A stretch of 64,000 nucleotides of DNA from Mustelus asterias (GCF_964213995.1 NC_135825.1:12090001-12154000); one strand, 5' to 3'. Counted from the stretch's first letter, positions 10,387 through 64,000 are shown. The notes: generated from the letters alone by a model not told the origin. Program-made: numbers and translations.

Positions 10387-10662
10387 CTAATGAGTTATGT
10401 TAGTATAAATTGCCATTTCAGATTCATCAAAGTTTGTGTGTTGTTCTTTGGGAGCTATCATTGAATCTTGACACATCCTCATTGTTAAACAACTGCCTCG
10501 ACCTCTCACCTCTTCAGGCTTTTGAATCTGCAGTGTTGCATATGTGACTCCATCCTCATTGTTAATGAACCGGACATTTAGCTCGCTGTGTGTTTCTGCT
10601 GAGTTCCCTCGATTGTGCTTTACACTGGCATACACAATGCTCCCTTCTACAACTGCCAATTG
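10387..10662 (-). CDS. Gene A exon 9 (last coding exon): cytoplasmic tail with ITIMs IVYASV and VTYATL, plus AIYTNI
   Basis: Acceptor ttattttttatattgcag|CAA in phase 0, matching exon 8; 91 aa open to TAG; two I/V-x-Y-x-x-L/V motifs. Confidence 0.85.
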   Translation of the reverse strand, partial: QLAVVEGSIVYASVKHNRGNSAETHSELNVRFINNEDGVTYATLQIQKPEEVRGRGSCLTMRMCQDSMIAPKEQHTNFDESEMAIYTNITH

Positions 10663-11009
10663 CTGCAATATAAAAAATAAAGATCCAGATTATTTCCATT
10701 TAACTTGAATGGTGATTTGTGGAGAAATCGATTTCTAGATCATTGCAAATCAGTTTACAAGTGATCACAACATGAGATAATCTATCTCCAGCGGTGAAAC
10801 ACATCATTTGTCCCAACTCCACATAAACCTGTCCAGTTAATCTCATCAAAATAATGTTCAAATCCTTTCCTTCCCATGTGCTTATCCAGCTTCTGTTTGA
10901 ATGTATTTCAGCTGTTTGCCTCAACTGTTCCCTGTGGTGGAAAATTCCACATTCTGAACATTCTGGGTAAAGATGTTTCTCTTGAATTTGCTGTTAGATT
11001 AACCTTTTT

Positions 11010-11340
11010 TATTGGCACATGGGATGTGGGCGTCGCTGGCTGGGCCAACATTTGTTGCCCATCCCTAATTGAACTGAGTGGCTTGCTCGGCCATTTCAGG
11101 GGGCATTTATGAGTCACATATAGGCCAGACCAGATATGGGCAGCAGATTTCCTAAGGGAAATGTCCCTAAAGGACGAGATGAGTTTTTACAACAATCGGC
11201 AATAGTTTCACGATTATCATTAGACTTTTAATTCCAGATTTTTATTGAGTTCTGCTGTGGTGGGATTTGGACCCAGATCCCCAGAGGATGATCCTGGGTC
11301 TCTGGATTACTAACCCAGTGACAATACCACTGCACCACAA
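11010..11340 (-). mobile_element. Second tRNA-derived SINE family
   Basis: Shares blocks (GTAATCCAGAG...TCTGGAATTA...GGTCTGGCCTA...GGGATGGGCAA) with copies at about 25080-25445(+), 45370-45810(+) and 60277-60642(+). Confidence 0.6.
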
Positions 11341-13386: not shown

Positions 13387-13439
13387 CTGATTGTCATTAA
13401 GATTATCGTTATCTCTTCCGTGGCTTATGTCATTTGTAT
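13387..13439 (-). CDS. Gene A exon 8: juxtamembrane cytoplasmic (D)TNDISHGRDNDNLNDNQ
   Basis: Strong acceptor cattttcatttttcag|AT and donor CAG|gtgagg; 53 nt, phase 1 to 0, exactly bridging the TM exon and the ITIM exon. Confidence 0.75.
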
Positions 13440-14980: not shown

Positions 14981-15069
14981 CCTTGTCGATTCGCCTCCGG
15001 TACAAAAGCAGAGAAACAGCGAACACCACAAGAATGGCCCCCAGCACCCCGAGCACAATGTAAATCAGA
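14981..15069 (-). CDS. Gene A exon 7: neutral transmembrane exon LIYIVLGVLGAILVVFAVSLLLYRRRIDK
   Basis: Acceptor ttcctattctctgtgtcacag|T, donor AAGG|gtgagt; 89 nt, phase 2 to 1; 23 uncharged residues followed by an RRR stop-transfer. Confidence 0.9.
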
Positions 15070-15114
15070 CTGTGACACAGAGAATAGGAAATGAGCAGTG
15101 TTGGACTTTACAAT

Positions 15115-15955
15115 CATAGAAAGTTTACAGCACAGAAAGTGACCACTTGGTCCATCATGTCTGTTGTGTTAAAAACCGGCCCCCCAGTGCAGTCCCATTC
15201 TCCAGCATTGTGTCCATTGCCCTGCAGATTATCCAGACATCTCTGAAATGAGTTGAGTGTTTCTGCCTCTACCACCCTTTCAGAAATCTGCAGCCCTCTG
15301 GGTGAAAACATTTTTCCTCATCTCTCCTCCCATCTTTCTACCAATTTCGTTAAATTTATGCTCCCGAGTCACTGACCTCTCTGCTAAAGTAAACTGGTCC
15401 TTCCCGCCCACTCTATCTGGGCTGCTTTTAATGTTGTCCATCTCAATCAATTCTCCCCTAAACCAAGGACAACAACCCCAGCCGACCAATGTTTTCTTCT
15501 TGGCTGCAATTTTCCAGTCCTGGCAACATCCCTGTAAGTCTCCTCTCTGATACATCCTTTTTGTCATGAGGTGACCAGAACTGCTCACAGTCCTCAAGTT
15601 GTGGCCTAACTAACATTTTATATAGTTCCAGCATAACCTTTCTGACCTTATATTCCAAACTTAAACTAATAAATGAAAGGATTCCATGTGCCTTCTTAAC
15701 CATCTTATCAACCTGTCCTGCTACCTTCAAGGACCTGTGGACACTCACTCCAAGGTTTCTCACTTCCTCTACATCTCTCAGTATCCTCCCATTTATTGTC
15801 GACAGATTTGCTTTGTTTGACCTGCTCAAATGCATCACCTCACACTTCTCTGGATTCTATTCCATTTGCCACTTTTCTGCCCACTTGACCAGTCCATTGA
15901 TATCTCCCTGCAGTCGATAGCAATCCTCCTCGCTATCGACCGCATTGGTAATTTT
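15115..15955 (-). mobile_element. Degenerate CR1 LINE fragment
   Basis: NLGVSVHRSLKVAGQVDKMVKKAHGIL...LEDCEQFWSPH (ORF 15458-15838). Confidence 0.8.
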
Positions 15956-17520
15956 CATGTTAATTCTCCCTACCTTACGTCTCAACCATTAATATATGCC
16001 AGAGAAAGCAACCTAGCATTGAGCTTTGGAAACAGCCTTCCAGTCACAAGAACAGCCATCAACAATCATCCTTTGTTTCCTGCCACAATTGATTCTTGGC
16101 CATTTGTTCAAGGAAGTGGGTTTTGAAATTATATCGCACTTTTCATGGCCTTTGGATGGTCTAAAGAATCTTACAATCTTGGAAGTACTTTTAAACAACC
16201 ACCACTGTTGTGATATGGGAGATGTGGCAACCAATTTGCACACCGCAAAATCTCAGAAACAGCAGTGAACTTTGACCAGATCAATATTGGCCATTTCTTC
16301 AGAGATTTCCTTGTCTGCTTTCTCTGTAGATCAGAAGTGACCTGCTGCGTATTTCCAGCAGCTTTTTCATCGTTAGTTGGTATTTTTTCCTCATCACCAT
16401 TGTAACCTCTGTGTTTACATTGGACAACAATTTCTGCTCTTTCTGTGTGTCCCAACTATGTTAGGGGTAGTGGGTTTTAACAGAAAAAGAAAATACCTGG
16501 TTTGCACACGTAGATTCAAACAAACACACAACAGGTTTTATTGAAGAGTTGCTCTCTGCACTGCATCAAGTACAAAACTGACAGTAACACAGCAGCCTGA
16601 GCACGCACCCTAATGACATCACATCAAATCAACCCTTTTTAAAACTCACACCTTCATTATGAAGCAAACACAACAACATCCCGCCAAGGTTTCTGATCTG
16701 AGAGTTATTGAAAAATGATGCCCAGTCTCCCGGATCATCAGAGACTGGACATATGACCCAAGATGTGTGTCAGGACCTTGCCGATGACCCAACATGATGA
16801 CCTCCATGGGAATTGCCTCGGACGTTGGAACTTCCAACGGATAATTCTGCTGTTCCCTGGGTCCCTCTGTGAAAATCTTCAGCTCTGGGTAAGAGTCAGA
16901 CACTTCAAACAATTCCATGGGGCTTAACTGGATAGTTACCCAGGAAATGTTAGAGTGAAAGAATCAAGTTTAATTCCTGGGTAATCACAGAACTGACCCC
17001 CGAATAATCACACTGACCCCCTGGAGTCCCCCCAATCCTCTGATTAACCCCCTGACATACCAACTATCACCCCACACCCCGACTATCTCCTGTCACTTCA
17101 TCAAACTACGACCTCACCCAACTGCCATCCTACCCATCTCACACACCTATGACCTCACTCATCTGTCTTCTCACCCACCTACCACTATTGCCTCCTGCTA
17201 CCAACACATCTATCCACCTGTCTCCCGATCCATCTTTCACCCGACCCACCTGTGGTCCTACTGAGTTCCGATGGAGTTCTCCGAGGGACACTGCGCTCCA
17301 CAGTTCAGGAGAATCTGGACTTGGAAGATCAGGCAAGAAATGTGGAGCTGAGTCAAGGGTGGAAAGCTTCAAGCGGAGTGGCAATCCAACAATGATTGCT
17401 GCTCTGTGACTGGCCCAGGACAATAAATGAAATCCATCCTCGCGCCAAAGTTGTGAAAGAGGATTTAATCACTCACACAGAAGCCATGTCATTTAAACAC
17501 TAACAATAAAAACAGCGTAC

Positions 17521-17599
17521 CTTTCGGCAAATTTGTAGTTTGGAATTGAGGAATGTGTTGGCGATACTGTTAAAACGTCACAAGGATTTTCAGGTCCAA
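17521..17599 (-). CDS. Gene A exon 6: Ser/Thr/Pro-rich stalk (V)GPENPCDVLTVSPTHSSIPNYKFAE(S)
   Basis: Acceptor gtttccttgtttcag|TT, donor AG|gtacgc; 79 nt, phase 1 to 2, joining the C2 exon to the TM exon in frame; conserved and open in the paralog at 52708-52786. Confidence 0.8.
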
Positions 17600-19909
17600 C
17601 TGAAACAAGGAAACAACATTCAGATCAGCCTCATTTTCATTGTCGTGAACCGAGAGAGTCACATTGTCAAGTGGCACCTCGACCTGAGGGAGAACCACGT
17701 TGAGGGAGCACCTCTTCTTGGGATGTGGGTGTCGCTGTTTAGGCCAGCAATTATTGCCCATTCCTAAGTGCCCTTGAGAAGGTGGTCATCAGATGCCTCT
17801 TGAACCACTGCAGTCCATGTGGTGTAGGTACACCCACAGTGCTGTGAGGGAGGGAGCACCCATCGCATCTATGCCAGTCAAAGACAAACCACCTGACTAT
17901 TCTAATCCCATTTTCCAGCACGTGGCCCATAGCTTTGTGTGCCTTGGCATCACGAGTGCACATCTAAATACTTCTGAAATGTGAAGACACCAGTAAAACT
18001 TGCCTATTACTCCTGGAAGAGGGCCATGTAATCATTTACATTTAGCTGAAAGGATGCATGGATCAGCAGTTCAACCAGACAATAGCACCGTCAACAGCAG
18101 AGCGCAATCTCCGTGCTGTACAGTGATATCAACCCCTTTCTCGGAAGGAGAATTTGAACTCACAACCCATTGGTTTCAGAAATCAGGCTGCTACCAACTG
18201 AGCCCCTTCTGACACTGACATATTTGAATATTAAACATTCAAACTGGTTATAGTCCTCATTAATTCAGGACTATCGTTAGTGTTTATGTTAACACTGAGT
18301 AATTCAGTGTTTAGAACATGGAATTCTGAGATTTTGAGCAGCATTTTGTGATGATAGAATTTTCTGGCAAAGAAGGAAATTTGGTCCATTGCCCTCCATC
18401 GCTATGAAAGAATTTGCCATTTAGAATCAGAGAATCCATGCAGCGCACAAGGAGGCCATTTGGCCCATCGAGTCTACAGCGACACTCCCATTGTCGTGTC
18501 TTTTCCCCAAATCCTCCTAAATGTCTGCTCCTTTTTAGCTTCCCTTGTGAAAGCTGTTATTTATTCTGTTTCTAACGCAATCCATATCTTAATAATCATT
18601 TGCATCAATAAAATTCTCCCAATTTCTCCCGCTGTCCTTGTTGTGATGATCTTAACTGGATTCTCTCGAGTATTCACTCACTTACTACTGGAAATAATTC
18701 GTCTCAATTTATCTTATCAAAGCTTCAAATAATTTTGAATAGATTTAGCAGACTATTTCCTTCTATTCTAATGATTCTTTGCCGGTGTTAGCTGTTGGGA
18801 GCACTCTTGTATCTGCAGCCACAAGGATCTGTGTTCTCGCCCTACTCTAGGAATCAAAAATCAAAGCTGAAACTCCTGTGCAGTACTGAGGAAGTGCTGC
18901 ACTGTTGGAGGTGCTGCCTTTCGGATGGGATGTTGAACTGAGTCCCCAATCTGCCTGCTCTATGGGCGGCATGGTGGCACAGTGGTTGGCACTGTTGCCT
19001 CACAGCGCCAGAGACCCGGGTTCAAATCTGGCCTTGCGTGACTGTCTGTGTGGAATTTGCACATTCTCCCCGTGTCTGCGTGGGTTTCCTCCGGGCACTC
19101 TGGTTTCCTCCCTCAGTCCAAAGATGTGCGGGTTAGGTGGATTCGCCAAGCTAAATTGCCCCTCAGTGTCAGGGGGAACTAGCTGGGGTAAATGCATGGG
19201 ATTATGGGGATAAGGCCTGGGTGGGATTGACGTTGGCGGAGACTCGATGCGCCAAATGGTCTCCTTCTGCACTGTAAGATTCTATGGATTCTATGAAACT
19301 ATGGATGTATAAGATCGATGGCACTTGATCTCCTGAAGAAAAACAGAAGCGTTATCCGAAATCACCCGGTGATATTTATCCCTCAATCAAAAACAGGTTA
19401 TCAGTTCATTATTTTGAGTTTGCTGTGTGTAAATTGGCTGCTGTGTTTCCTGCCTCACAACAGTGACAGTGCTTCAAAAAGCATTTCATTGGTTGTAAAG
19501 CGCTTCGAGAAGTCAGATGACTGTGAAAATAAATGGAAGACATTCTTTCATTTTGTAAGTGAGACCTCTTAAGATGCTATCATTTCACATCAACTCTTCA
19601 ACTCTCTATCCTTACGATTCATCCTAAAGCAAGAGACATCAGCTAAAGATTGTTATTCACAATTTGATCTCCAAGAAATGGGAACAGGAATGGTTAATGG
19701 AGACCTTGTCAGTCAAGTTCTATTTAATATTAATGGGATTACTGCAACATTTAGACATGTTTGGGGAATATTTTATGATCCTGATATTTTCAATCAATAT
19801 TTTAATCAGTAACTTTGTTCCGAGTTGTTGAGGGACAAAGCAGAGTGAATTTTGTCAGTTGCAGTCATTCAGAGAGACATTAGGAACCGAACCAGCAACC
19901 AGCTTATTT

Positions 19910-21540
19910 AGAACTTAGAACATAGAACATAGAACAGTACAGCACAGAACAGGCCCTTCGGCCCACAATGTTGTGCCGAGCTTTATCTGAAACCAAGATC
20001 AAGCTATCCCACTCCCTATCATCCTGGTGTGCTCCATGTGCCTATCCAATAACCGCTTAAATGTTCCTAAAGTGTCTGACTCCACTATCACTGCAGGCAG
20101 TCCATTCCACACACCAACCACTCTCTGCGTAAAGAACCTACCTCTGGTATCCTTCCTGTGTCTCCCACTACGAACCCTATAGTTATGCCCCCTTGTAATA
20201 GCTCCATCCACCCGAGGAAATAGTCTTTGAACGTTCACTCGATCTATCCCCTTCATCATTTTATAAACTTCTATTAAGTCTCCCCTCAGCCTCCTCCGCT
20301 CCAGAGAGAACAGCCCTAGCTCCCTCAACCTTTCCTCATAAGACCTACCCTCCAAACCAGGCAGCATCCTGGTAAATCTCCTCTGCACTCTTTCCAGCGC
20401 TTCCACATCCTTCTTATAGTGAGGTGACCAGAACTGCACACAATATTCCAAATGTGGTCTCACCAAGGTCCTGTACAGTTGCAGCATAACCCCACGGCTC
20501 TTAAACTCCAACCCCCTGTTAATAAAAGCTAACACACTATAGGCCTTCTTCACAGCTCTATCCACTTGAGTGGCAACCTTTAGAGATCTGTGGATATGAA
20601 CCCCAAGATCTCTCTGTTCCTCCACAGTCTTCAGAACCCTACCTTTGGCCCTGTAATCCACATTTAAATCAGTCCTACCAAAATGAATCACCTCACATTT
20701 ATCAGGGTTAAACTCCATTTGCCATTTTTCAGCCCAGCTTTGCATCCTATCTATGTCTCTTTGCAGCCTACAACAGCCCTCCACCTCATCCACTACTCCA
20801 CCAATCTTGGTGTCATCAGCAAATTTACTGATCCACCCTTCAGCCCCCTCCTCTAAGTCATTAATAAAAATCACAAAGAGCAGAGGACCAAGCACTGATC
20901 CCTGCGGCACTCCGCTAGCAACCTGCCTCCAATCCGAAAATTTTCCATCCACCACCACCCTCTGTCTTCGATCAGACAGCCAGTTACCTATCCAATCGGC
21001 CAACTTTCCCTCTATCCCACACCTCCTCACTTTCATCATAAGCCGACCATGGGGGACCTTATCAAACGCCTTACTGAAATCCATGTATATGACATCAACT
21101 GCCCTACCTTCATCAACACACTTAGTTACCTCCTCAAAAAATTCTATCAAATTTGTGAGGCACGACTTGCCCTTGGCGAATCCGTGCTGACTATCCCGGA
21201 TTAATCCGCATCTTTCTAAATGGTCGTAAATCCCATCTCTAAGGACCTTTTCCATCAATTTACCAACCACCGAAGTAAGACTAACCGGTCTATAATTACC
21301 AGGGTCATTTCTATTCCCTTTCTTAAACAGAGGAACAACATTCGCCATTCTCCAGTCCTCTGGCACCATCCCCGTGGACAGAGAGGACCCAAAGATCAAA
21401 GCCAAAGGCTCTGCAATTTCATCCCTTGCCTCCCAAAGAATCCTAGGATACATTTCATCAGGCCCAGGGGACTTTTCGACCTTCAGTTTATTCAAAACTG
21501 CCAGGACATCCTCCCTCCGAACATCTATTTCCTCCTATTT
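19910..21540 (-). mobile_element. Young CR1 LINE, 5'-truncated, open 498-aa RT ORF (19999-21495), in gene A intron 5
   Basis: KSPGPDEM, NYRPVSLTS, DFSKAFDKVPH, KFADD; (TTCTATG)n tail near 19915-19935. Confidence 0.95.
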
Positions 21541-21554
21541 CAACTATCACTTAC

Positions 21555-21878
21555 CAACACTGTTGATCTGTGCCACATAACTGCAATTCTCCCCTGATCT
21601 GTTGATCACTGACACTGAAACCATTTCACTGGATTTTTCTTCCTGGTGATTTGAGGCTGTGCAGTAATATTGATGATGTTGCTGTGTGAAGGATTGACAA
21701 TGTAGATCCAGTTTATTGGTGTCAGAGATCTCTGAATCTTCAGACGGGGTCTTTTCATACCATGTGTACTGAATGGGAAGTGATCCCTGGACAGACTCAC
21801 AGGAGACGGACACTGAGCCCCCAGAACATGAGGCATTTGGTGGTGATAGAAATTTAAGTTCAGGAACAGACACGGGTT
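21555..21878 (-). CDS. Gene A exon 5: Ig C2-type domain D4 (FCRL-like)
   Basis: ttttccacag|AA ... GTTG|gtaagt; 324 nt, phase 1-1; VSCESVQGSLPIQYTW...QYYCTASN. Confidence 0.92.
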
Positions 21879-23139
21879 CTGTGGAAAAGACAATCATTAA
21901 CGGATTTTCACAGTAACTTCATTGCAGTGTTAATGTAAACCTAATTGTGACACTAATTTATAAAAGCTTTAACAATAAACTTTAAAATTTTAAACTTTAG
22001 AATTACCAAAAAATTAAATTGTTTCATAGTCCCAATATTTCTACACCTCATCCAGGGTGTGAGGCGGAAGGGGAAGTGTTAGAGAGAGAGAGAGTTGGCA
22101 GTGGGAGCTTGGCCGAATGCAGGTAGTATCTATTGATTGCTGTCATGAACAGCAGATATTCATGATAGCAGATTAGTTAGTAACAATCATTGGAGTGTGA
22201 CCTGAGATAGACTGTGGATGTTTGCTGAGATAACGGAGACTTAAATATCTTTCCAAAAATCTAATCTTGACCTGAAATCCACCTCCGCTGCCAGTTGGAA
22301 TTGGGAATTTGGCGCTCAGCCAAATCTCCATTCACAGCAGCGGGACTGGATAATTCCAGCTGCGGACGAGTTTGGTGAATTCCAGCCATTGTTTGGAGTT
22401 GTATTTAACATTTAACAGTAAGTACCGTTTAACACTTAAGTGTGAGTACTGTTTAAAGTCGAGGGCGGGGTTTTATGGCCTCGAATGAGCGAGACGGAAA
22501 ATACCGCCCAAGGTCAACACCCTTGAGTCTGCCCCACACCCGCTCCGATACCATGGCGGGCGAGGCAGTAAAATTCCGACGTACGTATCATCCAAAGGAC
22601 ATGAGCTGGGAGATAGAAGCTATCCACTGGCAGCAACTGGAATAGTTAATTGGGGAAACTGGCTTGAACTGGTCATTTTGTACTGAGTCTCTTTGTTTTT
22701 GAACATATAAATTTAGACATTCTCAGTGCAAACAGCACTGGAGTCTGCCTTCAACCGAGTGTGGACGTTTAATGAGCTGAAGGAATTTACTACAGGGGAA
22801 GAAGTGAGCTGTTGGTGAGTATCTGGGGAGTATCCCGGAAGTGGGCAAGGTCTATTATCCAGGCATTAGGAGCAAGGGTGAGGTCCTTGCCAACTTGTTC
22901 ACCAGGAGAACGGGGTTCAAGGTGCAATAAAACTGACCCCATCTCTCTGGATCATTACTCTTGGCCTCTGAATTACAATTCCTGCAACATAATCATTGTT
23001 CTAACTGCCCTCTAGCTGCCAGACTCTGCACTGCTGTGGAGCCTCGGGATATCGGAGCTGTCAATGTCTCCTCCCAGGTAAAGCACCGATCAGACATTTC
23101 AGTCGAGAGTAATAAAGATAATCACGGAGAACAATGTAC

Positions 23140-23448
23140 CGTCAGATATTTGTAGCTTTACAGGAAACATTGAAAGGAGGCCGGGCTTATCAATACCACA
23201 GCTGTACCATCCTGCATCTCCTGAATGAAGATCCTCCATAGTAACAACAAATAATGCTTGTGTCTTGTGATCTGTGATCGACATTCTCCCTCGCCGTCCA
23301 TCTGGATCGTCTGATTTTACCAAAACAGAGCACTGACGACTCCAAGTTTTCACATGTGACTGAGACAATTTGTCATAGTGACAATCTATAGTGATCGATC
23401 TTCCCAAAACTCCTGTTACATTATTTTTTGCCCACAATGCACTTGCAG
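23140..23448 (-). CDS. Gene A exon 4: Ig V-type domain D3 (CD300/pIgR-like)
   Basis: tgtcttttcag|CT ... GACG|gtacat; 309 nt, phase 1-1; GRSITIDCHY...GRMSITD...DAGWYSCG. Confidence 0.92.
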
Positions 23449-24117
23449 CTGAAAAGACAACAGGTCAAAAATTGAACTGAAAATAATTGCTTCATACAAA
23501 CAGATATATTTCAATAGGATTTACCACTGTGTTCAGAGAAATCTCTCCAATACACCTTCTAATGCAATTGGATACTTCCTTGTTTGATATCGTTGGGCAC
23601 ATTGAATATGTGCTTCCGGCGGATTGATAATTAGACAACCATATTGAGATTGTATCCCAAGCCCTTTATAAAGCAAGACCCTGAGTGGTTCCATTAATCT
23701 TTTAGTCTTGGTTGGGACCTGGTGTGTTCACCACAGGTGTGTGGGAATTCTTTATTTTCATTTTGTACAATAGAAGCACGGTTCCTTCACAGCCGGCTCC
23801 TCGAGTTATTATATTCTCAAACAGCAATTCTCAGACAGCAGATTGTCTGCTCATGATCACGTTGCTCTTAGAGGGAGCTTATTGCTCACAAATTGGTGCT
23901 GAGCTTCCTACATCACAACAATGGCTCTGAATCAGTTCCAGCATTGACCAGAACGGACTTTAAAACTGTCCTGAAGATGTGAAAAGTGCAAAATAAATGC
24001 AATTCTATTTTTATTCCAATTGCTTCGAGCAACTGATAGAACATAAACCATGAGCAATTCAGACTGATGTTAATTTAAAAATTCGTTGTACTTTTTGAAG
24101 CGAAAAGAGATATTTAC

Positions 24118-24441
24118 CAATGTTGCTGATTTGTGTTAAATAACTGCAGTCATTCTCTGAAATGTGGATCACTGACACTGTAACCATTTCACTGGATTTT
24201 TTTCCCTGGTTATTTGAGGCTGTGCAGTAATATTGATGACGTCGCTGTTTGAAGGATTGACAATGTAGATCCAGATTATTGGTGTCAGAGATCTTTGAAT
24301 CTTCAGACGGGGTCTTTTCATACCATGTGTACTGAATGGGAAGTGATCCCTGGACAGACTCACAGGAGACGGACACTGAGCCCCCAGAACATGAGGCATT
24401 TGGTGGTGATAAAAATCTAAGTTCAGGAACAGACACGGGTT
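24118..24441 (-). CDS. Gene A exon 3: Ig C2-type domain D2 (FCRL-like)
   Basis: tttctttcccacag|AA ... ATTG|gtaaat; 324 nt, phase 1-1; closely similar to D4. Confidence 0.92.
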
Positions 24442-49142: not shown

Positions 49143-50618
49143 CTGACAGAAACAGCAACTTTGTTAGGAAGCTAACACAATACCATTATGTAAACACAGC
49201 TACCGGGTGGGATGGTGAGCCCGGGTTGGGGGACCACAGGAATGCTGATGGGGATTCAATATCTGGCAAAACCTGGAAGGCGCAGGCGACTTCATCAGAT
49301 TCACGGCCATAGTGGGCAAGAACCTGATTTACATACATTTTAATATATTTCCATATCATTAAAGACCCCCCCACTCCCCAGATATTGAGCCCTCGCTGTG
49401 TTTTCAAACCGGGGCAACGTGACATCACATTGGTGCATTTTACATCAGGTTCACCTGGACATGATGGGGAACCCCCTTCCTGGGCAAGAGGGATATGGTC
49501 AGGCAGTGGCCTGGCAATGCCCTCTGGCACTCTCCCTTGGCGCAGGTTGGCACTGCCAAGTTGGCACCATGCCACCCCAACATTGCCAACCTGGTAGTGC
49601 CAACCTGTACCAGTGGCAGTTCCGGGGTGGACCTCAGTGGGAGTCTGATGGGGGAGGGGTTATTCATTTACAAGTGAGGGTGGGCCGGAGCGGACAGGGG
49701 AGCTGGAGCAGCCGTTTGTGGGAAGGGGCTGGGTTTGTCGGCAATGGCTGTGTGGGTGGAGGGTTGGAGGGAAGGGCTCCAATGTTCGGGGGGAAGGGGG
49801 GTGGTGCCAGCACTGACTGCTGGAGGGGGGGAAAGGTCTGATATTCGGGGGAGGGGTTTGGTGTCAGCACTGACTGCTGAGGGGTGATGTGGGGGGAGAA
49901 TTGCTGGCTCATAATAGGAGGATGCCCCGACTCTGACCGGGGTGTGGTGGGATTTGGGGGGAGCCCCTGAGAGCTCTGTGGTGGGTGGGGGGGAGGTTAC
50001 ATTTAGTTTTGATTGGGCCGCCATGTTTGTGCACTGTCAGCTTACTGCAGCCAGGATTTGCTGGTGTATCGAGGCCCCGCCCCCTACATGACGATGTGAA
50101 GCACGCCCAGCTGTTTTTTTTGTGACAGAGTGTGGTAAGTTCTGGAGAGAAAGACAACCTGCTTCGAGCCAGAACCAACAGTTTTCAGTAAGATTTCCCT
50201 AATATTGTGTTTTATGTTTACGGGGGCTGTTTACAGATTCAGCTTTATTCTGGAGGCAGTCGGTGTATCAGTAAAACATTCAGTTCAGATGCTGGGAGAG
50301 CAGGATAATGGCTCATTTTAGCCATGGAGGGGGGAAGCTAAGCAAAAAATGACTGTTGTTTCCGGTGAGAAAACCGACAGGTGTCTCTCCAGAGAAACAG
50401 GTTAGATTTCTGTGCAGATCTTTGACTGAGAGAGGAAACCGGAGCACACGGAGGAAACTCACGTAGGTTCAGAGAATGTGCAGACTCCAGGCAGACAGTC
50501 ACCCAAGGCCAGAATTGAACTTGGATCCCTCGTGCTGCGAGGCAGCACTGCTAACCACAGTGCCTCTGTGTCACCTGTTGTCATCCTATTGTTAGATCAA
50601 AATCCAGGAATTTCTTAC

Positions 50619-50712
50619 CACTCACTTTTCGTCCATGCCACACCAATCTGACCTGTGTCACACAACTGCAGTTCTCCCCTGATCTGATGATCACTGACAC
50701 TGGAACCATTTC
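50619..50712 (-). pseudogene. Relic 3' end of a C2 Ig exon at the duplication breakpoint
   Basis: Translates EMVPVSVIIRSGENCSCVTQV versus D4 EMVSVSVINRSGENCSYVAQI; abuts a CR1 fragment at 50713; possible donor gtaag at 50618. Confidence 0.8.
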
Positions 50713-52707
50713 TGGGACCTGTGGACATTCACTCCAAGGATTTTCAAATCCTCCACATACCCCAGTATCCTCCCATTTATTATCTCACCATTTGCTTTGT
50801 TTGACCTGCTCAAATGCATCACCTCACACTTCTCTGGGTTGAATTCCATTTGCCACTTTTCTGCCCACCTGACCAGTCCATTGATATCTTCCTGCAACCG
50901 ATAGCAATCCTCCTCGCTATCTACTGCATTAGTAATTTTCATTACATTCCATCTAAATCATTAATATATGCCAGAAAAAACAGGGGACCGAGCACTGAGC
51001 ATTGGAAACAGCCTTCCAGTCACAAAAACAGCCATCAACAATCATCCTTTGTTTCCTGCCACAATTAATTCTTGGCCATTTGTTTACGGAAGTGGGTTTT
51101 GAAATTATACAGCACTTTTCATGGCCTTTGGATGGCCTAAAGAATTTTATAATCTGGGAAGTATTTTTAAACAACCGCCACTGTTGTGATATGGGAGATG
51201 TGGCAACCAATTTGCACACAGCAAAATCTCAGAAACAGCAGTGAACTTTGACCAGATCAATATTGGCCATTTCTTCAGAGATCTCCTTGTCTGCTTTTTC
51301 TGTAGATAAGAAGTGACCTGCTGCGTATTTCCAGCAGCTTTTTCATCATTTTGATGTTTAGTTGGTATTTTTTCCTCATCACCATTGTAACCTCCGTGTT
51401 TACATTGGACAACAATTTCTGCTCTTTCTGTGTGTCCCAACTATGTTAGGGGTAGTGGGTTTTAACAGAAAAAGAAAATACTTGGTTTGCACACGTAGAT
51501 TCAAGCAAGCACAAACCAGGTTTTATTGATGAGCTGCTCTCTGCACTGCATCAAGTACAAAACTGACAGTCACACAGCAGCCTGAGCACGCACCCTAATG
51601 ACATCACATCAAATCAACCCATTTTAAAACTCACACCTTCATGATGAAGCGAACACAACAACATCCCGCCAAGGTTTCTGATCTGAGAGTTATTGAAAAA
51701 TGATGCCCAGTCTCCCCGATCGTCAGAGACTGGACATATGACCCAAGATGTGTGTCAGGACCCTGCAGATGACCCAACATGATGATCTCCATGGGAATTG
51801 CCTGGGACATTGGAACTTCCAACGGACAGTTCTGCTGTACCCTGGGTCCCTCTGTGAAAATCTTCAGCTCTGGGTAAGAGTCAGACACTTCAAACAATTC
51901 CATGGGGCTTAACTGGATAGTTACCCAGGAAATGTTAGACTGAAAGAATCAAGTTTAATTCCTGGGTAATCACAGAACTGACCCCCGAATAATCACACTG
52001 ACCCCCTGGAGTCCCCCCAATCCTCTGATTAACCCCCTGACACACCAACTATCACCCCACACTCCGCCAATTCCACCTGATCTTGTGACTATGCCACAAC
52101 CTGAGCCAATCCGATTATTCCCTCTGACTACCCTTTGCACCCACCACTTGATTACCCAATGTCCAAATCTGATTAGCCCCCAAACCAGGCTACCCCTGCC
52201 AACCTGACCCAATTGCCACACTATTCATCTACCACCTCATCAACCTACAACCTCACCCACCTGCAACCCTACCCTCCTGTCACTTCATCAACAGACTACC
52301 TCACCCAACTGCCACTCTACCCACCTCACACGCTTGTGACCTCACTCATCTGTTTTCTCACCCACCTACCATCCTTGCCTCCGACTAGCAACACATCTAT
52401 ACACCTGTCTCCCTATCCATCTTTCACCCGACCCACCTGTGCTCCTACAGAGTTCCGATGGAGTTCTCCGAGGGACACTGCGCTCCACAGTTCTGGAGAA
52501 TCTGGAGTCGGAAGATCAGGCAAGAAATGTGGAGCTGAGTCGAGGGTGGAAAGCTTCAAGCGGAGTGGCAATCCAACAATGATTGCTGCTCTGTGACTGG
52601 CCCAGGACAATAAATGACATCCATTCTCACGCCAAAGTTGTTAAAGAGGATTTAATCACTCACACAGAAGCCATGTCATTTAAACACTAACAATAAAAAC
52701 AGCGTAC

Positions 52708-52786
52708 CTTTCAGCAAATTTGGAGTTTGGAATTGAGGAATGTGTTGGCGATACTGTTAAAATTTCACAAGAATTTTCAGGTCCGA
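52708..52786 (-). CDS. Gene B stalk exon (V)GPENSCEILTVSPTHSSIPNSKFAE(S)
   Basis: Splice sites intact; 79 nt; 4 amino-acid differences from the gene A stalk. Confidence 0.75.
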
Positions 52787-56737: not shown

Positions 56738-56751
56738 CAACTATCACTTAC

Positions 56752-57075
56752 CAACGCTGTTGATCTGTGCCACATAACTGCAATTCTCCCCTGATCTGTT
56801 GATCACTGACACTGAAACCATTTCACTGGATTTTTCTTCCTGGTGATTTGAGGCTGTGCAGTAATATTGATGATGTTGCTGTGTGAAGGATTGACAATGT
56901 AGATCCAGTTTATTGGTGTCAGAGATCTCTGAATCTTCAGACGGGGTCTTTTCATGCCATGTGTACTGAATGGGAAGTGATCCCTGGACAGACTCACAGG
57001 AGACGGACACTGAGCCCCCAGAACATGAGGCATTTGGTGGTGATAAAAATTTAAGTTCAGGAACAGACACGGGTT
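56752..57075 (-). CDS. Gene B Ig C2 domain D4
   Basis: Same splice sites as gene A exon 5; one amino-acid change (TWYEK to TWHEK). Confidence 0.9.
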
Positions 57076-58336: not shown

Positions 58337-58645
58337 CGTCAGATATTTGTAGCTTTACAGGAAACATTGAAAGGAAGCCGGGCTTATCAATACCACAGCT
58401 GTACCATCCTGCATCTCCTGAATGAAGATCCTCCATAGTAACAACAAATAATGCTTGTGTCTTGTGATCTGTGATCGACATTCTCCCTCGCCGTCCATCT
58501 GGATCGTCTGATTTTACCAAAACAGAGCACTGACGACTCCAAGTTTTCACATGTGACTGAGACAATTTGTCATAGTGACAATCTATAGTGATCGATCTTC
58601 CCAAAACTCCTGTTACATTATTTTTTGCCCACAATGCACTTGCAG
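58337..58645 (-). CDS. Gene B Ig V domain D3
   Basis: Same splice sites as gene A exon 4; one amino-acid change (PGLLS to PGFLS). Confidence 0.9.
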
Positions 58646-59314: not shown

Positions 59315-59638
59315 CAATGTTGCTGATTTGTGTTAAATAACTGCAGTCATTCTCTGAAATGTGGATCACTGACACTGTAACCATTTCACTGGATTTTTTT
59401 CCCTGGTTATTTGAGGCTGTGCAGTAATATTGATGACGTCGCTGTTTGAAGGATTGACAATGTAGATCCAGATTATTGGTGTCAGAGATCTTTGAATCTT
59501 CAGACGGGGTCTTTTCATACCATGTGTACTGAATGGGAAGTGATCCCTGGACAGACTCACAGGAGACGGACACTGAGCCCCCAGAACATGAGGCATTTGG
59601 TGGTGATAAAAATCTAAGTTCAGGAACAGACACGGGTT
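59315..59638 (-). CDS. Gene B Ig C2 domain D2
   Basis: Same splice sites and same translation as gene A exon 3. Confidence 0.9.
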
Positions 59639-61652
59639 CTGTGGGAAAGAAACAAACATTCAGAAACTGACTGAGCATCTAAAAATCAAACACTCTGTGA
59701 ATTTCAGCTCATCAACCTCTCATTCAGGGTCAGTCATGTTGCAATCTCACCAACACATCCAGCTCTCCATTTCTCTCCATCCTCCAAGCAGCCTGAACTA
59801 CAATGTCTGCTATTATATCAGAACATCGCAGCTCTCCAGATCAAACCATGAACCAGGACCGAAAGATTTAAATTTAATGGTGAGTGGATTAGATGAGATT
59901 TGGGGCAATGGGTTATTTCACTCGGGGGATGTTGAGGGTCTGGAACTCACTGCCTGGAAGAGTGGTCGAGGGTGGGAGAGGCGGATAACCTGATCACATT
60001 AAACAAAATGGATTAAACTTGAGATGCTGTAACCTACAGAGCTCTGGATCAAGAACTAGATGGTGGGATTAGATTGGATTGCTTGTTCAGTCAACCCAGT
60101 GTGGCACAGTGGCACAGTGATTAGCACTGCAGCCTCACAGCGCCAGGGACCCGGATTCAATTCCAGCATTGGCTGTGTGGTCAGTGTGGAGTTTGCACGT
60201 TTTCCCCGTGTCTGCGTGGTTTTCCTCTGGGTGCTTCAGTTTCCTCCCACAACCAAAGATATGCAGATACCCATGGGGAGGTGATGGCCCAGTGGTGTTA
60301 TCGCTAGCCTATAAATCCATAATCTCATCTAATGTTCTGGGGACCAGGGTTCGAATCCCGCCATGGCAGCAGTTGGAATTTGATTTCAATAAAGAAAATC
60401 TGGAATTAAGAATCTACTGATCACCATGAAACCATTGTCAGTTATTGGAAAACCCATCTGGTTCACTCATGTCCGTTAAAGAAGGAAATCTACCATCCTT
60501 TCCTGGTCTGGCCTACATGTGATGCCAGAGCCAAAGCAATGTGGTTAATTCTTGACTGTCCTCTGAAATGGCCTCGCAAACCTCTCAGGATGGGCAATAA
60601 ATGCCACCCAGCCAGCGATGCCCATGTCCACAAATGAATAAAACAAATACTGGCACCTCCCACCAGGCACCAGGCAGTGCCAATGTGGGTGGTGCTGGCG
60701 GGGGAGTTGGCATTCTGGGGGGTGGGGCCTATTGGGGGCTCAATGTGTTGGGGGGTTTTCAGTGACACTGTGCACTGGGATCAGTGTGAGAAGGAGAGAG
60801 GAGGGGGACCAGGGCTGGCTATCTGGGTGGGGGGAGATCGGGGCTGGCCCGGGAGAGCTCTGGTAGGCCAGTGATTGGATGGTTGTGGGGGGTCGGGATG
60901 GCCAGCGATCGGGAGGCTAGCGGTGAGGGGGCCACTGTGCATGCGCCACTCTCCGCAGTGACAGATCGGTGTGTGTGCAGTGGCTCACTCAGCACTATAC
61001 TGCCAGCCTCTCTAGTGGGATTTGGACCCGCTCACCACATTTCAGAGTGAATCAATCTGTGTCGGAGAATCGTTCTGGTCCGTCCCTTATGTTGTCAAAT
61101 GAGCCTCTTCAGACACTGGAGTTGCAACACATCAAGGAAGCTGATCAGGAAACGTGTACTCGCTGTGTTGTGGGATAGCCCGTCAGTGAGTTGCTTGTCT
61201 CTGTTCATTCCTTTGTCTTGTGGAGCTCAGGGTCTGTGTGGAGGAGGCAGTTGCTGCTATTGGTGCTATTGGTCACCTGGGTCCTCATCTGAGGCCCAAA
61301 ATAAAACAGCCTGAGAACCACCCATGCTGATCTGATAGATACAATCACCAAAATGTAACCCAGAAATACACATTACCATCTCTGTTGTGAAAGTCTGTAA
61401 ATACTGATATTAAAACCTTTCACACAATCAGGCTAGAAATAAGCAGTGAGGTTCCAATGCTCCTTGGTATCTTTCCCAGTCACTTCTTCAGCCTCCCCCA
61501 TTGCCTCTGTCTTCTGCCCTTGCTCAGTAACCCGAGCAGCCATTGTTAGATTCCACTAATTGCACTCACTGAGCGATTAATAGACTGAAATTGATAACCC
61601 GTCTCTCACTGGGGGGATTTGATCACACACGGATTGACACATTTAATGTTTC

Positions 61653-64000
61653 TGATGCGTGACAATTAAGCACGTGGAACCAAGGCTTCGATATTGAAGG
61701 CTTTTATTGTGTAACAATGGAACTACTAACACGAATACACCAGTTCAGACTGAAGGGGTCCTGCCGGAGCAGGGGGTCTTATACCTCGCCACCGGAGGCG
61801 GGACCCCACTGGAATGTGCCATGATAACTCTTATAACAGGTAAACACCCTAACCCAACAACATTGTACAACCCCCACAGTAACAACACCCTAGCCCAACA
61901 GTAACATAATAACAACCCCCAGTGGTGAACCAACGATGGTTCACCACATTCACCCCTCCTTTAAGAACAAAAGGTGGCGGGGTGCAAGAAAAAACAGGTC
62001 ATATAAACAGAATTCACAAGTCCAGACGGTCTGGAGGACCGCACCGACGCTGTGATCTCCTCAACACCGGTTGCGAAACCGGAGCAGGTGCTTGCGGTGG
62101 CGTTCTTTCCAAAACAACGTCTGGCTGTCCCCTCAAGGACTCCCGGGCCGGTTGGCCCTGGTGAGGCGATGGTGCAGGGGATCCTGGAACCTTTGGTGGT
62201 GGTGGTGGTGGTGATGATGGTCGCGCCGATCTCCCGAGTCTCAGGCAAGCTGTACATGGGAGTAAAAGTGTTATGCACTGGTCCCGGTGCTGACCGCGCC
62301 ACGTCTCGGGAAGCAATGAGGAGTAGTGGATTCGTGACTGGGGGAATAGGAGCGACAGGAGTTGCTACGTCCCCTGCGGGCGCCAGGTCTCTAATGGAGA
62401 CAGTGTCCTCTCGCCCGTCAGGATATGCCACATAGGCATACTGAGGGTTGGCGTGGAGGAGTTGGACCGGTTCGACCAAGGGGTCGGACCTGCGAGCCCT
62501 CACATGTCGCCGCAGAAGGACGGGTCCTGGGTACGTCAACCAGGCTGGCAATGAGGTTCCCGAGGACATCCTCTCGTGGGGAGTAGCATTGGTTGCCGTA
62601 CACAGGAGGGAGCGGATAGAATGGAGTGCCTTTGGAAGGACCTCCTGCCAACGGGAGACTGGAAGGCCCCTGGATTTCAGTGCCAGTAGGACAGCCTTCC
62701 AGACTGTAGCATTCTCCCTTTCCACCTGTCCGTTACCCCTAGGGTTGTAGCTCGTGGTTCTACTAGAGGCAATCCCGAATGAGAGCAGGAATTGCCTCAA
62801 GTCGTTGCTCATGAACGACGAGCCCCTGTCGCTATGAATGTAGCAGGGGTACCCGAACAGGGTAAAAAGCTCACTGAATGCCTTGATGACGGTGGCAGTC
62901 GACGTGTCCGCACAGGGGACAACAAACGGAAACCGGGAATACTCGTCTATTATGTTGAGGAAATAGACATTCCGGTCCGTTGAGGGAAGGGGGCCCTTAA
63001 AATCCACACTCAGCCTCTCAAAAGGGCGAGTGGCCTTGACCAATTGTGCCCGGTCTGGTCGATAAAAGTGTGGTTTGCATTCTGCGCAAATCCGACAGCT
63101 TCTCGTCACTGACCTGACATCCTCCACCGAGTAGGGCAGGTTGCGGGCTTTGACGAAGTGGTAGAGTCTGGTGACTCCAGGATGACACAGATCATTGTGG
63201 AGAGCCTTCAAGCGGTCCTCCTGCATGATGGCGCATGTTCCGCGCGAGAGGGCATCCGAGGACTCATTGAGCTTCCCTGGACGATACATAATATCGTAAT
63301 TATAGGTGGAGAGCTCAATTCTCCACCGCAAGATCTTATCGTTCTTGATCTTGCCCCTCTGCGTGTTGCTGAACATAAACGCCACGGATCGTTGATCCGT
63401 GATCAGGGTGAACCGCTTCCCTGCCAGGTAATGGCGCCAGTGTCTGACTGCCTCCACAATGGCCTGAGCCTCCTTCTCCACCGCTGAGTGCCGAATTTCG
63501 GGGCCTTGAAGGGTGCGGGAAAAGAACGCGACGGGCCTGCCTGCCTGGTTTAGTGTGGCGGCTAGGGCGAAATCAGATGCATCACTCTCCACCTGGAAAG
63601 GGATGGATTCATCCACTGCGTGCATCGTGGCTTTCGAGATGTCGCTTTTCAAAGCCTTGAAGGCCAATTGGGCCTCCGGCGTAAGTGGGAAGGTCGTGGA
63701 CTTAATGAGCGGACGAGCTTTGTCCGCGTAGTTGGGGACCCACTGTGCATAATACGAAAAGAACCCGAGGCATCTCCTCAGTGCTTTCGTGCTAGCGGGC
63801 AAGGGAAGTTCAGTAAGTGGGCGCATACGGTCTGGATCAGGGCCAATGACCCCGTTTTCCACCACGTATCCGAGGATGGCTAACCTACGCGTACGGAATA
63901 CGCACTTCTCCCTGTTATAGGTCAGATTCAGGCGAGATGCAGTGCGCAGAAAGTGTTGGAGATTCGTGTCGTGGTCCTGCTGGTCATGGCCGCAGATGGT
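61653..64000 (-). mobile_element. Duplicated Gypsy element (3' LTR 61653-61948 plus IN/RH/RT, cut by the window end)
   Basis: Same left flank (..TAATGTTTC|TGATG) as the 26456 copy; ORF 61961-63865; 21-bp in-frame deletion in integrase. Confidence 0.97.

What the first reader, a model, noticed from the sequence alone, without database searches (positions are those of the whole stretch)
10387..64000. Paired inhibitory/activating Ig-superfamily immune receptors with an almost identical ectodomain in a cartilaginous fish
Seen: gene A assembles in frame as SP-V-C2-V-C2-stalk-neutral TM-ITIM tail (603 aa). About 35.2 kb upstream, gene B has the same D2, D3 and D4 exons (only 2 amino-acid differences) and a similar stalk. 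Its TM exon is unrelated, contains WNVIRWGL, and has no copy of the ITIM exons. Established: the same ectodomain with opposite signalling ends is the hallmark of paired receptors (KIR, LILR/PIR, CD300, SIRP, Siglec-5/14), often maintained by gene conversion under pathogen pressure. Modular CD300/pIgR-related receptors (MDIRs) are known from skate. Inference: this is a very young inhibitory/activating pair of an MDIR-like family. I cannot tell from sequence alone whether this pair has been described.
Basis: partly seen in the sequence, partly recalled or inferred. Interest (0 to 1): 0.93.

Follow-up and report, generated by a model that had tools for sequence, protein, structure and literature searches.

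The report
Young paired MDIR receptor genes, shark
Two neighbouring shark genes have almost the same outer, ligand-binding part but opposite signalling ends, one inhibitory and one probably activating, and they are new members of an immune receptor family already known from skates.

Summary
Gene A (minus strand, 35811 to 10387) assembles in phase from nine exons to 603 codons: leader, V, C2, V, C2, stalk, uncharged TM, and a tail with two canonical ITIMs. About 35.2 kb upstream, exons D2-D4 recur with 4 nucleotide and 2 amino-acid differences.

The family is MDIR. Skate MDIR5, MDIR2 and MDIR3 are strong hits, and MDIR5 has gene B's exact layout. The window most likely comes from Mustelus asterias.

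The copies have two divergence strata, about 7% around the stalk and about 0.6% across the Ig exons, introns and transposons. A truncated C2 exon lies at the breakpoint. B is therefore a chimera of an A-type front and an older activating gene's end.

No RNA was available, so B's D4>stalk>TM join is inferred from paralogues and other species. The one NCBI model that reaches B's 3' region uses other exons and has no TM. The literal NxxR motif is not conserved in the family.

This is a new member of a known kind. First-stage notes, unchecked, report similar paired loci elsewhere in this genome.

The parts
35775..35811 (-). Gene A leader exon (ATG at 35811, 12 codons plus 1 base, GT donor)
   Evidence: Its 12 codons match the first 12 residues of M. 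asterias XP_078098046.1 at 11 of 12.
32354..32668 (-). Gene A D1, V-set exon (315 nt, phase 1-1). An in-frame alternative acceptor 6 nt upstream would add Val-Ser.
   Evidence: Pfam V-set 1.1e-11. Best PDB matches are pIgR at 5.4e-44 and CD300f/CLM-1 at 3e-19.
24118..24441 (-). Gene A D2, C2-type Ig exon (324 nt)
   Evidence: Pfam Ig_3 2.9e-7. PDB FCRL5 9e-42 over 6 stretches and CD22 d6-d7 1.8e-5.
23140..23448 (-). Gene A D3, V-set exon (309 nt)
   Evidence: Pfam V-set 2.7e-10.
21555..21878 (-). Gene A D4, C2-type Ig exon (324 nt)
   Evidence: Pfam Ig_3 7.2e-7.
17521..17599 (-). Gene A stalk exon (79 nt, phase 1 in, phase 2 out)
   Evidence: The same stalk>TM join is in the M. asterias paralogue models XP_078098061.1 and XP_078098058.1.
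14981..15069 (-). Gene A TM exon, with no charged residue in the membrane span
   Evidence: It is 100% identical over 30 aa to the TM of XP_078098058.1. 18 of 266 family proteins match it.
13387..13439 (-). Gene A small cytoplasmic exon (53 nt), which brings the frame to phase 0
   Evidence: It is one of only 2 phase-compatible candidates in 10669-14980. It matches the paralogue models at 89-94% over 18 aa.
10387..10668 (-). Gene A last exon: two canonical ITIMs (IVYASV, VTYATL), one ITIM-like motif (AIYTNI), stop at 10389-10387. AATAAA begins at 10334.
   Evidence: 19 of 266 family proteins match it.
59315..59638 (-). Gene B D2 exon, identical to A's
58337..58645 (-). Gene B D3 exon, 1 difference (Leu>Phe)
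56752..57075 (-). Gene B D4 exon, 3 differences (Tyr>His plus 2 synonymous)
52708..52786 (-). Gene B stalk exon (79 nt). Six nucleotide and 4 amino-acid differences from A's. AG/GT sites are intact.
   Evidence: It is closer to the stalk of paralogue XP_078098061.1 (69%) than A's stalk is (63%).
48289..48388 (-). Gene B TM exon with Arg in the outer third of the span (…IWNVIRWGL…), ending in phase 0 at a GT donor
   Evidence: 43 of 266 family proteins match it. It is 86% identical to the TM of M. asterias XP_078098258.1.
44382..44429 (-). Gene B terminal coding exon (15 codons, no tyrosine, plus stop). AATAAA or ATTAAA begins at 44265.
   Evidence: It is the top of 516 candidates. 0 of 500 shuffles reach its score with the C-termini of XP_078098258.1 and S. 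canicula XP_038676045.1.
50641..50718 (-). Truncated 3' end of an older C2 exon, joined directly to a cut LINE fragment. This is the outer breakpoint of the A-like segment in B.
   Evidence: Contigs from two samples span 50501-50816 with 0 differences.
15731..18050 (.). Older stratum of the duplication, partner 50715-53250, about 7% different
   Evidence: 173 differing columns.
18100..28824 (.). Young stratum, partner 53300-64000 (window end): 64 substitutions, two 1-nt indels and one 21-nt deletion in 10725 bp. It includes a LINE and an LTR retrotransposon.
49124..49142 (-). It is in phase and has AG/GT, but has no homology support.
   Evidence: No family protein matches it.
52437..52501 (-). 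First of two rival 3' exons used by the NCBI model XP_078098046.1. Canonical sites.
   Evidence: Only 1 of 266 proteins matches it.
49186..49323 (-). Terminal exon of XP_078098046.1. It matches at 100% over 46 aa and has no TM.
   Evidence: Only 1 of 266 proteins matches it.

Best explanation
The window holds two tandem genes of the MDIR family, a cartilaginous-fish family of modular receptors. These combine CD300/pIgR-type V domains with FCRL/CD22-type C2 domains. The source is most likely the starry smooth-hound, Mustelus asterias.

Gene A is a complete V-C2-V-C2 receptor with an uncharged TM and ITIMs. When its tyrosines are phosphorylated it should recruit SH2 phosphatases and damp signalling (inferred from the motifs).

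Gene B carries the same D2-D4 exons. It then splices, by inference, through its own stalk exon to an Arg-bearing TM exon and a 15-residue tail without tyrosine. That is the family's activating form. It should signal through an acidic-TM ITAM adaptor whose identity is unknown.

B is a chimera made in two steps:
1. An A-like segment was joined, without homology, into the last C2 exon of an older activating gene. This is the older event, with about 7% divergence.
2. Everything upstream of the D4-stalk intron was later replaced or re-duplicated as one block, transposons included. This is the recent event, with about 0.6% divergence. Unequal crossing-over in the tandem array is the most likely cause.
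For: Shown by the sequence:
- All exon borders, phases and the 603-codon total for A.
- Two amino-acid differences in D2-D4.
- Two divergence strata with a step near 18.05/53.25 kb.
- A truncated C2 exon joined to a cut LINE at 50713-50718.

Family:
- V exons resemble pIgR and CD300. C2 exons resemble FCRL5 and CD22.
- MDIR5 scores 5.4e-139 and 4e-157, MDIR3 6.7e-183, MDIR2 1.4e-71.
- The MDIR5 protein (GenBank ABC86800.1) has the layout SP-V-C2-V-C2-stalk-Arg TM-16 aa tail.

Joins, by analogy:
- M. asterias XP_078098258.1 has the same stalk-end/TM junction residues and the same TM>tail join.
- XP_078098061.1 and XP_078098058.1 have A's stalk>TM>small exon>ITIM joins.
- The Heptranchias perlo proteins XP_067863711.1 (Arg TM) and XP_067863712.1 (ITIM) share a near-identical stalk.
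- The Arg TM occurs in 53 of 266 fetched proteins, typically with about 16 residues after it.
- B's tail exon is the top of 516 candidates, with 0 of 500 shuffles reaching its score.

Reality of the locus: DNA contigs of three samples cover 29-30 of 30 bins of 48000-53000. Listed contigs of two samples cross the breakpoint without a difference.
Against: - No RNA. None of the 21 listed runs is on record as RNA. Of the four laid, three cover introns and intergenic DNA evenly as genomic DNA would, and X21 lay on repeats only. None shows a 52708>48388 or 48289>44429 joint.
- The only public model that reaches B's 3' region (XP_078098046.1, 1254 aa) chains several cassettes and ends in two other exons without a TM.
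- No separate public model of A or B appeared among 76, 120 and 4 listed hits.
- B's stalk is no better conserved than its flanks (6 of 79 nt differ), so selection on it is not shown.
- At 0.6% divergence, intact Ig exons say little about function.
- B's V1 and leader are outside the window.
- All three samples' contigs differ from the window at two TM codons.
- A 2014 survey found no FcR-gamma chain in sharks (PMC4016189, passages).
Confidence: 0.62

Rival explanations
1. The B cassette does not make a membrane-bound activating receptor. Its Ig exons are used as in NCBI's XP_078098046.1. There, cassettes of neighbouring units are chained (D4 spliced to the next V exon, which is in phase) and the product ends in a short non-TM tail. 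That would give a multi-domain soluble protein, or a giant receptor.
For: - The last 46 residues of XP_078098046.1 match 49326-49189 at 100%, and its two 3' exons have canonical splice sites.
- All Ig exons are phase 1-1, so chaining keeps the frame.
- A 12-domain paralogue model exists (XP_078098058.1, 1400 aa).
- Unchecked first-stage notes describe 12- to 21-domain genes nearby.
Against: - Only 1 of 266 family proteins matches those two exons, against 43 for the Arg-TM exon.
- The chained model runs through D1-type V exons. In gene A this exon type directly follows its own leader exon with ATG and donor.
- The cassette layout V-C2-V-C2 plus Arg TM is that of skate MDIR5.
- XP_078098058.1 repeats only D3-type V plus C2 inside, not D1-type, so it is a different kind of expansion.
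Confidence: 0.2
2. B is a recent, unexpressed or decaying duplicate. The chimera exists in the DNA but has no function, and its intact frames only reflect its youth.
For: - The Ig part differs by 0.6%, too little time for decay.
- Stalk divergence equals that of the flanking non-coding DNA.
- There is no expression evidence.
Against: - The older part has had time to decay (about 7%), yet it keeps an open stalk exon with both splice sites.
- The TM and tail exons are open, with canonical sites, and close to an annotated paralogue: 86% identity in the TM, and an alignment score of 52 for the tail against 23 for the next candidate.
Confidence: 0.12
3. The second ectodomain copy is an assembly artefact, such as a haplotype placed in tandem.
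For: The young stratum is 99.4% alike, and no reads were laid on 53.3-64 kb.
Against: - There is no N between the copies.
- The two copies have different downstream sequence from 15731/50715 on.
- B-specific sequence and its breakpoint are held by contigs of separate samples.
- The 7% stratum cannot be allelic.
- The public model shows at least one further B-type cassette.
Confidence: 0.03

Closest known systems
Modular domain immune-type receptors (MDIR2, MDIR3, MDIR5) of the clearnose skate; GenBank ABC86796.1, ABC86797.1, ABC86800.1
   Same: - The same two domain kinds in alternating order.
- MDIR5 is SP-V-C2-V-C2-stalk-Arg TM-short tail, as in B. MDIR2 and MDIR3 have an uncharged TM with ITIM tails, as in A.
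- 51-67% identity per exon by tblastn. E-values run from 1e-71 to 1e-183.
- PMC3031540 (passages) describes them as multigene families of activating and inhibitory receptors.
   Different: - Different lineage: a shark against a skate.
- Here the two forms share an almost identical ectodomain and sit 35 kb apart, and the breakpoint of the tail swap is still readable.
- I could not read the original paper (Cannon et al. 2006, not held). I therefore cannot say whether such near-identical pairs were reported there.
Heptranchias perlo XP_067863711.1 (Arg TM) and XP_067863712.1 (ITIM tail)
   Same: An activating and an inhibitory family member share a near-identical stalk and then diverge into the same two TM types.
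   Different: - They are predicted models from another shark order.
- Their domain numbers differ (four against two Ig domains).
- Their genomic spacing was not examined.
Mammalian paired receptors such as CD300A/CD300C
   Same: - CD300-type V domain.
- One ITIM partner and one partner with a charged TM residue and a short tail (PMC12447643, abstract only; otherwise established knowledge).
   Different: - Mammalian CD300 proteins have a single V domain and no C2 domains.
- No orthology is implied.
- Ligands here are unknown.
Xenopus FcR-like receptors (XFL) with TM1 (NxxR) and TM2 modules
   Same: - Ig-domain exons are joined combinatorially with two alternative TM modules.
- Pairs have like ectodomains.
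- An Arg lies near the outer end of the activating TM.
- The NxxR TM was shown to associate with FcR-gamma (PMC2413239, passages).
   Different: - In the shark and ray family only the Arg and its flanking Trp residues recur. The Asn is present in 2 of 56 instances.
- Sequence homology to TM1 was not tested.
- XFL has no CD300/pIgR-type V domains.
Hybrid KIR and LILR genes made by unequal crossing-over (recalled, not from a call)
   Same: Tandem, highly similar units. A recombinant gene takes its ectodomain from one parent and its tail from another.
   Different: The mechanism here is inferred from two divergence strata within one window. The reciprocal or parental arrangement was not seen.

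Membership tests
MDIR (modular domain immune-type receptors) | Significant sequence similarity to the named skate MDIR proteins | tested here: met
   - A family query finds MDIR5 at 5.4e-139 and MDIR2 at 1.4e-71.
- A second query finds MDIR3 at 6.7e-183 and MDIR5 at 4e-157.
- MDIR5 and MDIR2 match the window's V and C2 exons at 1e-23 to 1e-37.
MDIR (modular domain immune-type receptors) | V domains of the CD300/pIgR/TREM kind | tested here: met
   D1 against PDB: pIgR 5.4e-44, CLM-1 3e-19, CMRF35-H 1.1e-15, NKp44 1.9e-7, TREM2 about 1e-4. Pfam V-set for D1 and D3.
MDIR (modular domain immune-type receptors) | Members come as activating forms (charged TM, short tail) and inhibitory forms (ITIM tail) | tested here: met
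   Exon content of A and B. Of 266 fetched proteins, 53 have the Arg TM and 70 have at least 2 ITIM-like motifs near the C-terminus.
MDIR (modular domain immune-type receptors) | Transcribed as such in immune tissues | not testable with these tools
   No RNA run was listed. The laid runs gave no splice joints.
Paired receptor (working definition) | Highly similar ectodomains in two separate genes | tested here: inconclusive
   D2-D4 differ by 2 of 318 residues. B's V1 is outside the window. Whether B is a separate transcription unit is inferred, not shown.
Paired receptor (working definition) | One partner has ITIMs. The other has a charged TM residue and no signalling motif of its own. | tested here: met
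   At exon level only. No ITIM exon copy lies near B.
Paired receptor (working definition) | Opposite signalling: phosphatase recruitment against adaptor association | not testable with these tools
   Needs experiments.
LRC/FcR-type TM1 (NxxR, FcR-gamma-coupled) | NxxR motif at the outer end of the TM, conserved in the family | tested here: not met
   B reads N-V-I-R literally. Across the family the position is K, D, S, T, E, Q, M and others, and Asn occurs in 2 of 56 instances. Only the Arg between two Trp residues recurs.
LRC/FcR-type TM1 (NxxR, FcR-gamma-coupled) | Sequence homology to the TM of FcR-gamma-associated receptors, and an FcR-gamma gene in the species | not tested
The TM exon gave 0 PDB hits at E up to 10. 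PMC4016189 reports that no gamma chain was found in sharks in 2014.
Polymeric Ig receptor | Ectodomain made of tandem pIgR-type V domains only | tested here: not met
   V exons alternate with FCRL/CD22-type C2 exons. NCBI's name 'polymeric immunoglobulin receptor-like' reflects V-domain similarity only.
FCRL | Ectodomain of FcR/FCRL-type C2 domains only | tested here: not met
   D2 and D4 resemble FCRL5 domains (9e-42 summed over six stretches), but D1 and D3 are V-set.

The most novel reading that the evidence does not exclude
The array behaves like a KIR-type, copy-number-variable haplotype system in a shark. Unequal crossing-over between roughly 35-kb tandem units repeatedly places one ligand-binding cassette on inhibitory or activating ends. 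Individuals would then differ in how many activating and inhibitory versions of the same ectodomain they carry.

Hints:
- At least one further near-identical cassette is present in the public model.
- An unchecked note places a second NVIR TM about 20.9 kb beyond the window.
- One of three samples holds only a 1.4-2.2% diverged version of B-specific DNA.
Probability: 0.2. Interest if true: 0.65.

Novelty: new member of a known kind. Interest (0 to 1): 0.4.

Why it matters
It is a readable example of how an activating partner of an inhibitory immune receptor arises. The ligand-binding exons are kept, the signalling end is swapped by duplication, and both the breakpoint and two age layers are still visible.

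It also places the skate MDIR family in a carcharhiniform shark, apparently as part of a large cluster.

It qualifies statements in the literature that cartilaginous fish lack pIgR- and FcR-like receptors (PMC4016189 and PMC13337447, passages). Receptors built from pIgR/CD300-type V and FCRL-type C2 domains are abundant in NCBI's elasmobranch and chimaera annotations. Whether any of them binds immunoglobulin is open.

The pair gives one ectodomain to use as a probe for ligands.

Tried and rejected
RNA evidence. The look-up of sequencing runs listed no RNA run. The one small run of the same species label (X21) lay only on repeats in 3 of 30 bins. Expression and splice joints therefore stay untested.

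A findings look-up beyond base 64000 was rejected as out of range.

Original MDIR papers. PMC3701310 and PMC2823954 are not held. What I say of MDIR rests on passages of PMC3031540 and on the deposited proteins.

Prior description. Searches found no paper on this family in Mustelus and none on such a near-identical pair in sharks. Subscription journals are mostly not covered.

A's small cytoplasmic exon. tblastn found nothing clear. A splice and phase enumeration left two candidates, and paralogue models later confirmed one of them.

Other negatives. NCBIfam gave nothing. The TM exon gave no PDB hit.

Rejected readings:
- Exon-targeted gene conversion, because introns and transposons are as alike as the exons.
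- Homology to the NxxR TM1 type, because the Asn is not conserved.
- The 19-nt micro-exon as the main route, because it has no homology support. It stays possible.

Unresolved. Whether the last cassette of XP_078098046.1 is B itself. Its D3 differs from the window's B at one residue, while the cassette before it is identical.

I did not ask for supplementary files.

Full report
WHAT IS THERE

The window has no N. It contains a direct duplication: 17087-28824 aligns with 52274-64000 (the window's end) at 98.63% over 11750 columns, and 15731-17081 aligns with 50715-52066 at 92.7%.

Every segment with homology to the receptor family lies on the minus strand. There are seven full Ig exons: four in copy A and three in copy B. 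There are also two different TM exons, one ITIM exon, two stalk exons and one truncated C2 remnant (tblastn of 266 fetched proteins at E<1e-4).

GENE A

Exon borders read from the sequence are canonical and in phase.
- Leader: 35811..35775.
- Four Ig exons, each phase 1-1: 32668..32354, 24441..24118, 23448..23140, 21878..21555.
- Stalk: 17599..17521, ending in phase 2.
- TM: 15069..14981, uncharged.
- Last exon: 10668..10390, plus stop.

A's TM exon ends in phase 1 and the last exon starts in phase 0, so one more exon is needed. An enumeration of phase-compatible exons with good splice sites in 10669-14980 left 2 candidates. One of them, 13439..13387, matches the corresponding piece of two M. 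asterias paralogue models at 89-94%.

I computed this by arithmetic and built no joined sequence.

The tail holds two canonical ITIMs and a third motif with Ala at position -2. AATAAA follows 53 nt after the stop.

GENE B

D2, D3 and D4 recur at 59638..59315, 58645..58337 and 57075..56752. They carry 0, 1 and 3 nucleotide differences. Two of these change an amino acid (Leu>Phe, Tyr>His).

B's stalk exon, 52786..52708, keeps both splice sites and differs from A's at 6 of 79 nt and 4 residues.

Exon 48388..48289 has a strong acceptor and is in phase with the stalk. It encodes a hydrophobic span with an Arg in its outer third, and it ends in phase 0 at a GT donor.

I found one at 44429..44385: a pyrimidine-rich acceptor, 15 codons without tyrosine, a stop, and a poly(A) hexamer 117 nt further on. 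The support is as follows.
- Among 516 AG-preceded short open frames in 36000-48288 it is the best match to the C-termini of four family proteins.
- None of 500 shuffles reaches its score with M. asterias XP_078098258.1 or with S. canicula XP_038676045.1.
- 36 of 500 shuffles reach it with each of the two more distant Heptranchias proteins.

No ITIM exon copy lies near B.

WHICH FAMILY

The V exons are Pfam V-set. They are closest to pIgR, CD300f/CLM-1 and CD300a among solved structures. The C2 exons are closest to FCRL5 and CD22.

A phmmer scan with D3 found 1455 proteins at E up to 1e-3. The best is XP_078098046.1 of Mustelus asterias. Its Ig cassettes are identical or nearly so to the window's exons, and its last 46 residues match 49326-49189 at 100%. 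The window therefore most likely comes from that species, a houndshark of the Carcharhiniformes.

Searches with two natural family members returned the named skate proteins MDIR5, MDIR2 and MDIR3 among the top hits. They also returned dozens of NCBI models from sharks, rays and Callorhinchus. These are named 'polymeric immunoglobulin receptor-like', 'Fc receptor-like protein 5', 'CMRF35-like molecule' or 'uncharacterized'.
- MDIR5 reads leader, V, C2, V, C2, stalk, Arg TM, and 16 further residues. This is B's predicted layout.
- MDIR2 and MDIR3 have uncharged TMs and ITIM tails, which is A's type.
- PMC3031540 (passages) describes skate and zebrafish MDIRs as multigene families of activating and inhibitory receptors related to CD300, TREM, FCAR and pIgR.

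These are therefore MDIR-family genes, not pIgR or FCRL proper.

HOW GOOD IS THE CASE THAT B IS AN ACTIVATING RECEPTOR?

For:
- The Arg-TM type occurs in 53 of 266 fetched proteins, usually with about 16 residues after it. 43 of them match B's exon.
- M. asterias XP_078098258.1 shows the same junction residues from stalk to TM and the same TM>tail join.
- The Heptranchias models XP_067863711.1 and XP_067863712.1 share one stalk and then take the two TM types.

Against:
- No RNA was to be had. None of the 21 listed runs is on record as RNA.
- Of the four runs I laid on 48000-53000, three cover introns and intergenic DNA evenly, so they are genomic. The fourth lies on repeats only. None of the listed joints is a splice.
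- XP_078098046.1 chains several cassettes. It ends in exons 52501..52437 and 49323..49186, which have canonical sites but match no other family protein.
- Neither A nor B appears as a separate public model among the hits listed.

The D4>stalk>TM join in B is therefore inferred, not shown.

THE TM MOTIF

B reads N-x-x-R literally. PMC2413239 (passages) shows that NxxR TMs of Xenopus FcR-like receptors associate with FcR-gamma and resemble those of several mammalian FcR-gamma-coupled receptors.

In this family, however, the position of the Asn is variable. Of 56 TM instances, 20 have Lys, 12 have Asp and only 2 have Asn. Only the Arg flanked by Trp residues recurs.

I therefore do not file it under that TM type. 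The adaptor is unknown. A 2014 survey found no gamma chain in sharks (PMC4016189, passages).

ORIGIN

Differences between the copies fall into two strata.
- From 15731 to about 18050 there are 173 differing columns, about 7%. This part includes the stalk.
- From 18100 to 28824 there are 64 substitutions, two 1-nt indels and one 21-nt deletion in 10725 bp, about 0.6%.

The young stratum includes a LINE reverse-transcriptase ORF and a Ty3/gypsy-type LTR element. Exons (4 of 957 nt) are no more alike than non-exon DNA. So the likeness comes from a block event, not from conversion aimed at exons.

At the outer end of the homology, the LINE fragment that continues in A is cut in B. There it is joined directly to the last 70 nt or so of a C2 exon. 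Downstream of that point B has only the Arg-TM and tail exons.

B is thus an A-type front grafted onto the remains of an older activating gene, and its Ig part was later renewed. Unequal crossing-over in the D4-stalk intron between tandem units would give exactly this, and would duplicate a 35-kb unit. I could not read the neighbouring DNA to test that.

An unchecked first-stage note places another NVIR TM 20.9 kb beyond the window. That is within about 1.4 kb of where the model puts it.

IS THE COPY REAL?

- Contigs of three samples cover 29-30 of 30 bins of 48000-53000.
- Listed contigs of two samples span 50501-50816, across the breakpoint, with no difference. The best holder may be the assembly's own sample.
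- The 7% stratum and the different downstream sequences exclude a misplaced haplotype.

VERDICT

Its reading of B is the best explanation but rests on comparative evidence. The family has been known since 2006, and activating and inhibitory members are its hallmark. This is therefore a new member of a known kind. Its added value is a legible tail-swap history and a possible array polymorphism.

Noticed in passing
window 26764-30942 (-) and 61961-64000 (-): An LTR retrotransposon sits in the D1-D2 intron of A, with one open 1392-aa frame in the order protease, RT, RNase H, integrase (Ty3/gypsy type). The B copy carries a 21-nt deletion, and its frame opens at 634 aa within the window.
   Followed up: partly
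window 19999-21495 (-) and 55197-56692 (-): The D4-stalk intron holds a non-LTR reverse-transcriptase ORF. In A it is open for 498 aa. In B it is split into pieces, and a 1-nt deletion lies at the position matching 20418.
   Followed up: partly
window 23140-23448 (-) and 58337-58645 (-): The D3-type V domain has three cysteines where D1 has four. The Cys after the conserved Trp of the C strand is missing, which would leave its partner unpaired. The same is seen in the M. asterias paralogue models XP_078098061.1 and XP_078098058.1. That the four-Cys pattern is typical of CD300/pIgR V domains is recalled, not tested.
   Followed up: no
window 48289-48388: In all three DNA samples, the only contigs laid on B's TM exon differ from the window at 48305 and 48377 (Phe>Tyr and Phe>Ser). 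Both residues are those of the paralogue XP_078098258.1. These could be paralogous copies merged in the contigs or allelic variants.
   Followed up: partly
window 49556-50458 and 52470-52930: Sample S3 (run X4) holds only diverged versions of B-specific DNA. One 898-nt contig has 13 other letters plus 11 gap letters, and one 461-nt contig over the stalk has 10 other letters. Samples S1 and S2 match within 0-3 letters. This hints at strong haplotype or copy variation.
   Followed up: no
window 49186-49323 and 52437-52501: NCBI's XP_078098046.1 (1254 aa) chains a leader, V, C2, C2 and two V-C2-V-C2 cassettes, and ends in two exons that no other family protein matches. Its first cassette equals A's D1 plus B's D2-D4 with 0 mismatches. 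Its second differs at one residue each in D1 and D3.
   Followed up: partly
window 47335-47970: A tandem repeat of about 36 nt has long open frames on both strands. It lies between B's TM exon and its tail exon, that is, in B's last intron.
   Followed up: no
window 52067-52273: B holds about 200 nt that are absent from A, between the two aligned blocks of the older stratum. The region is G-rich and repetitive, and overlaps the ORF at 51970-52221.
   Followed up: no
window 38084-38647 and 40917-41488: A 93% direct repeat of about 570 nt lies in the A-B intergenic region, next to reverse-transcriptase fragments.
   Followed up: no
window 1-39000: An unchecked first-stage note (s1-892308) places a receptor of at least 21 Ig domains on a stretch overlapping 1-39000 of this window. 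I find only four Ig exons there, those of gene A.
   Followed up: partly
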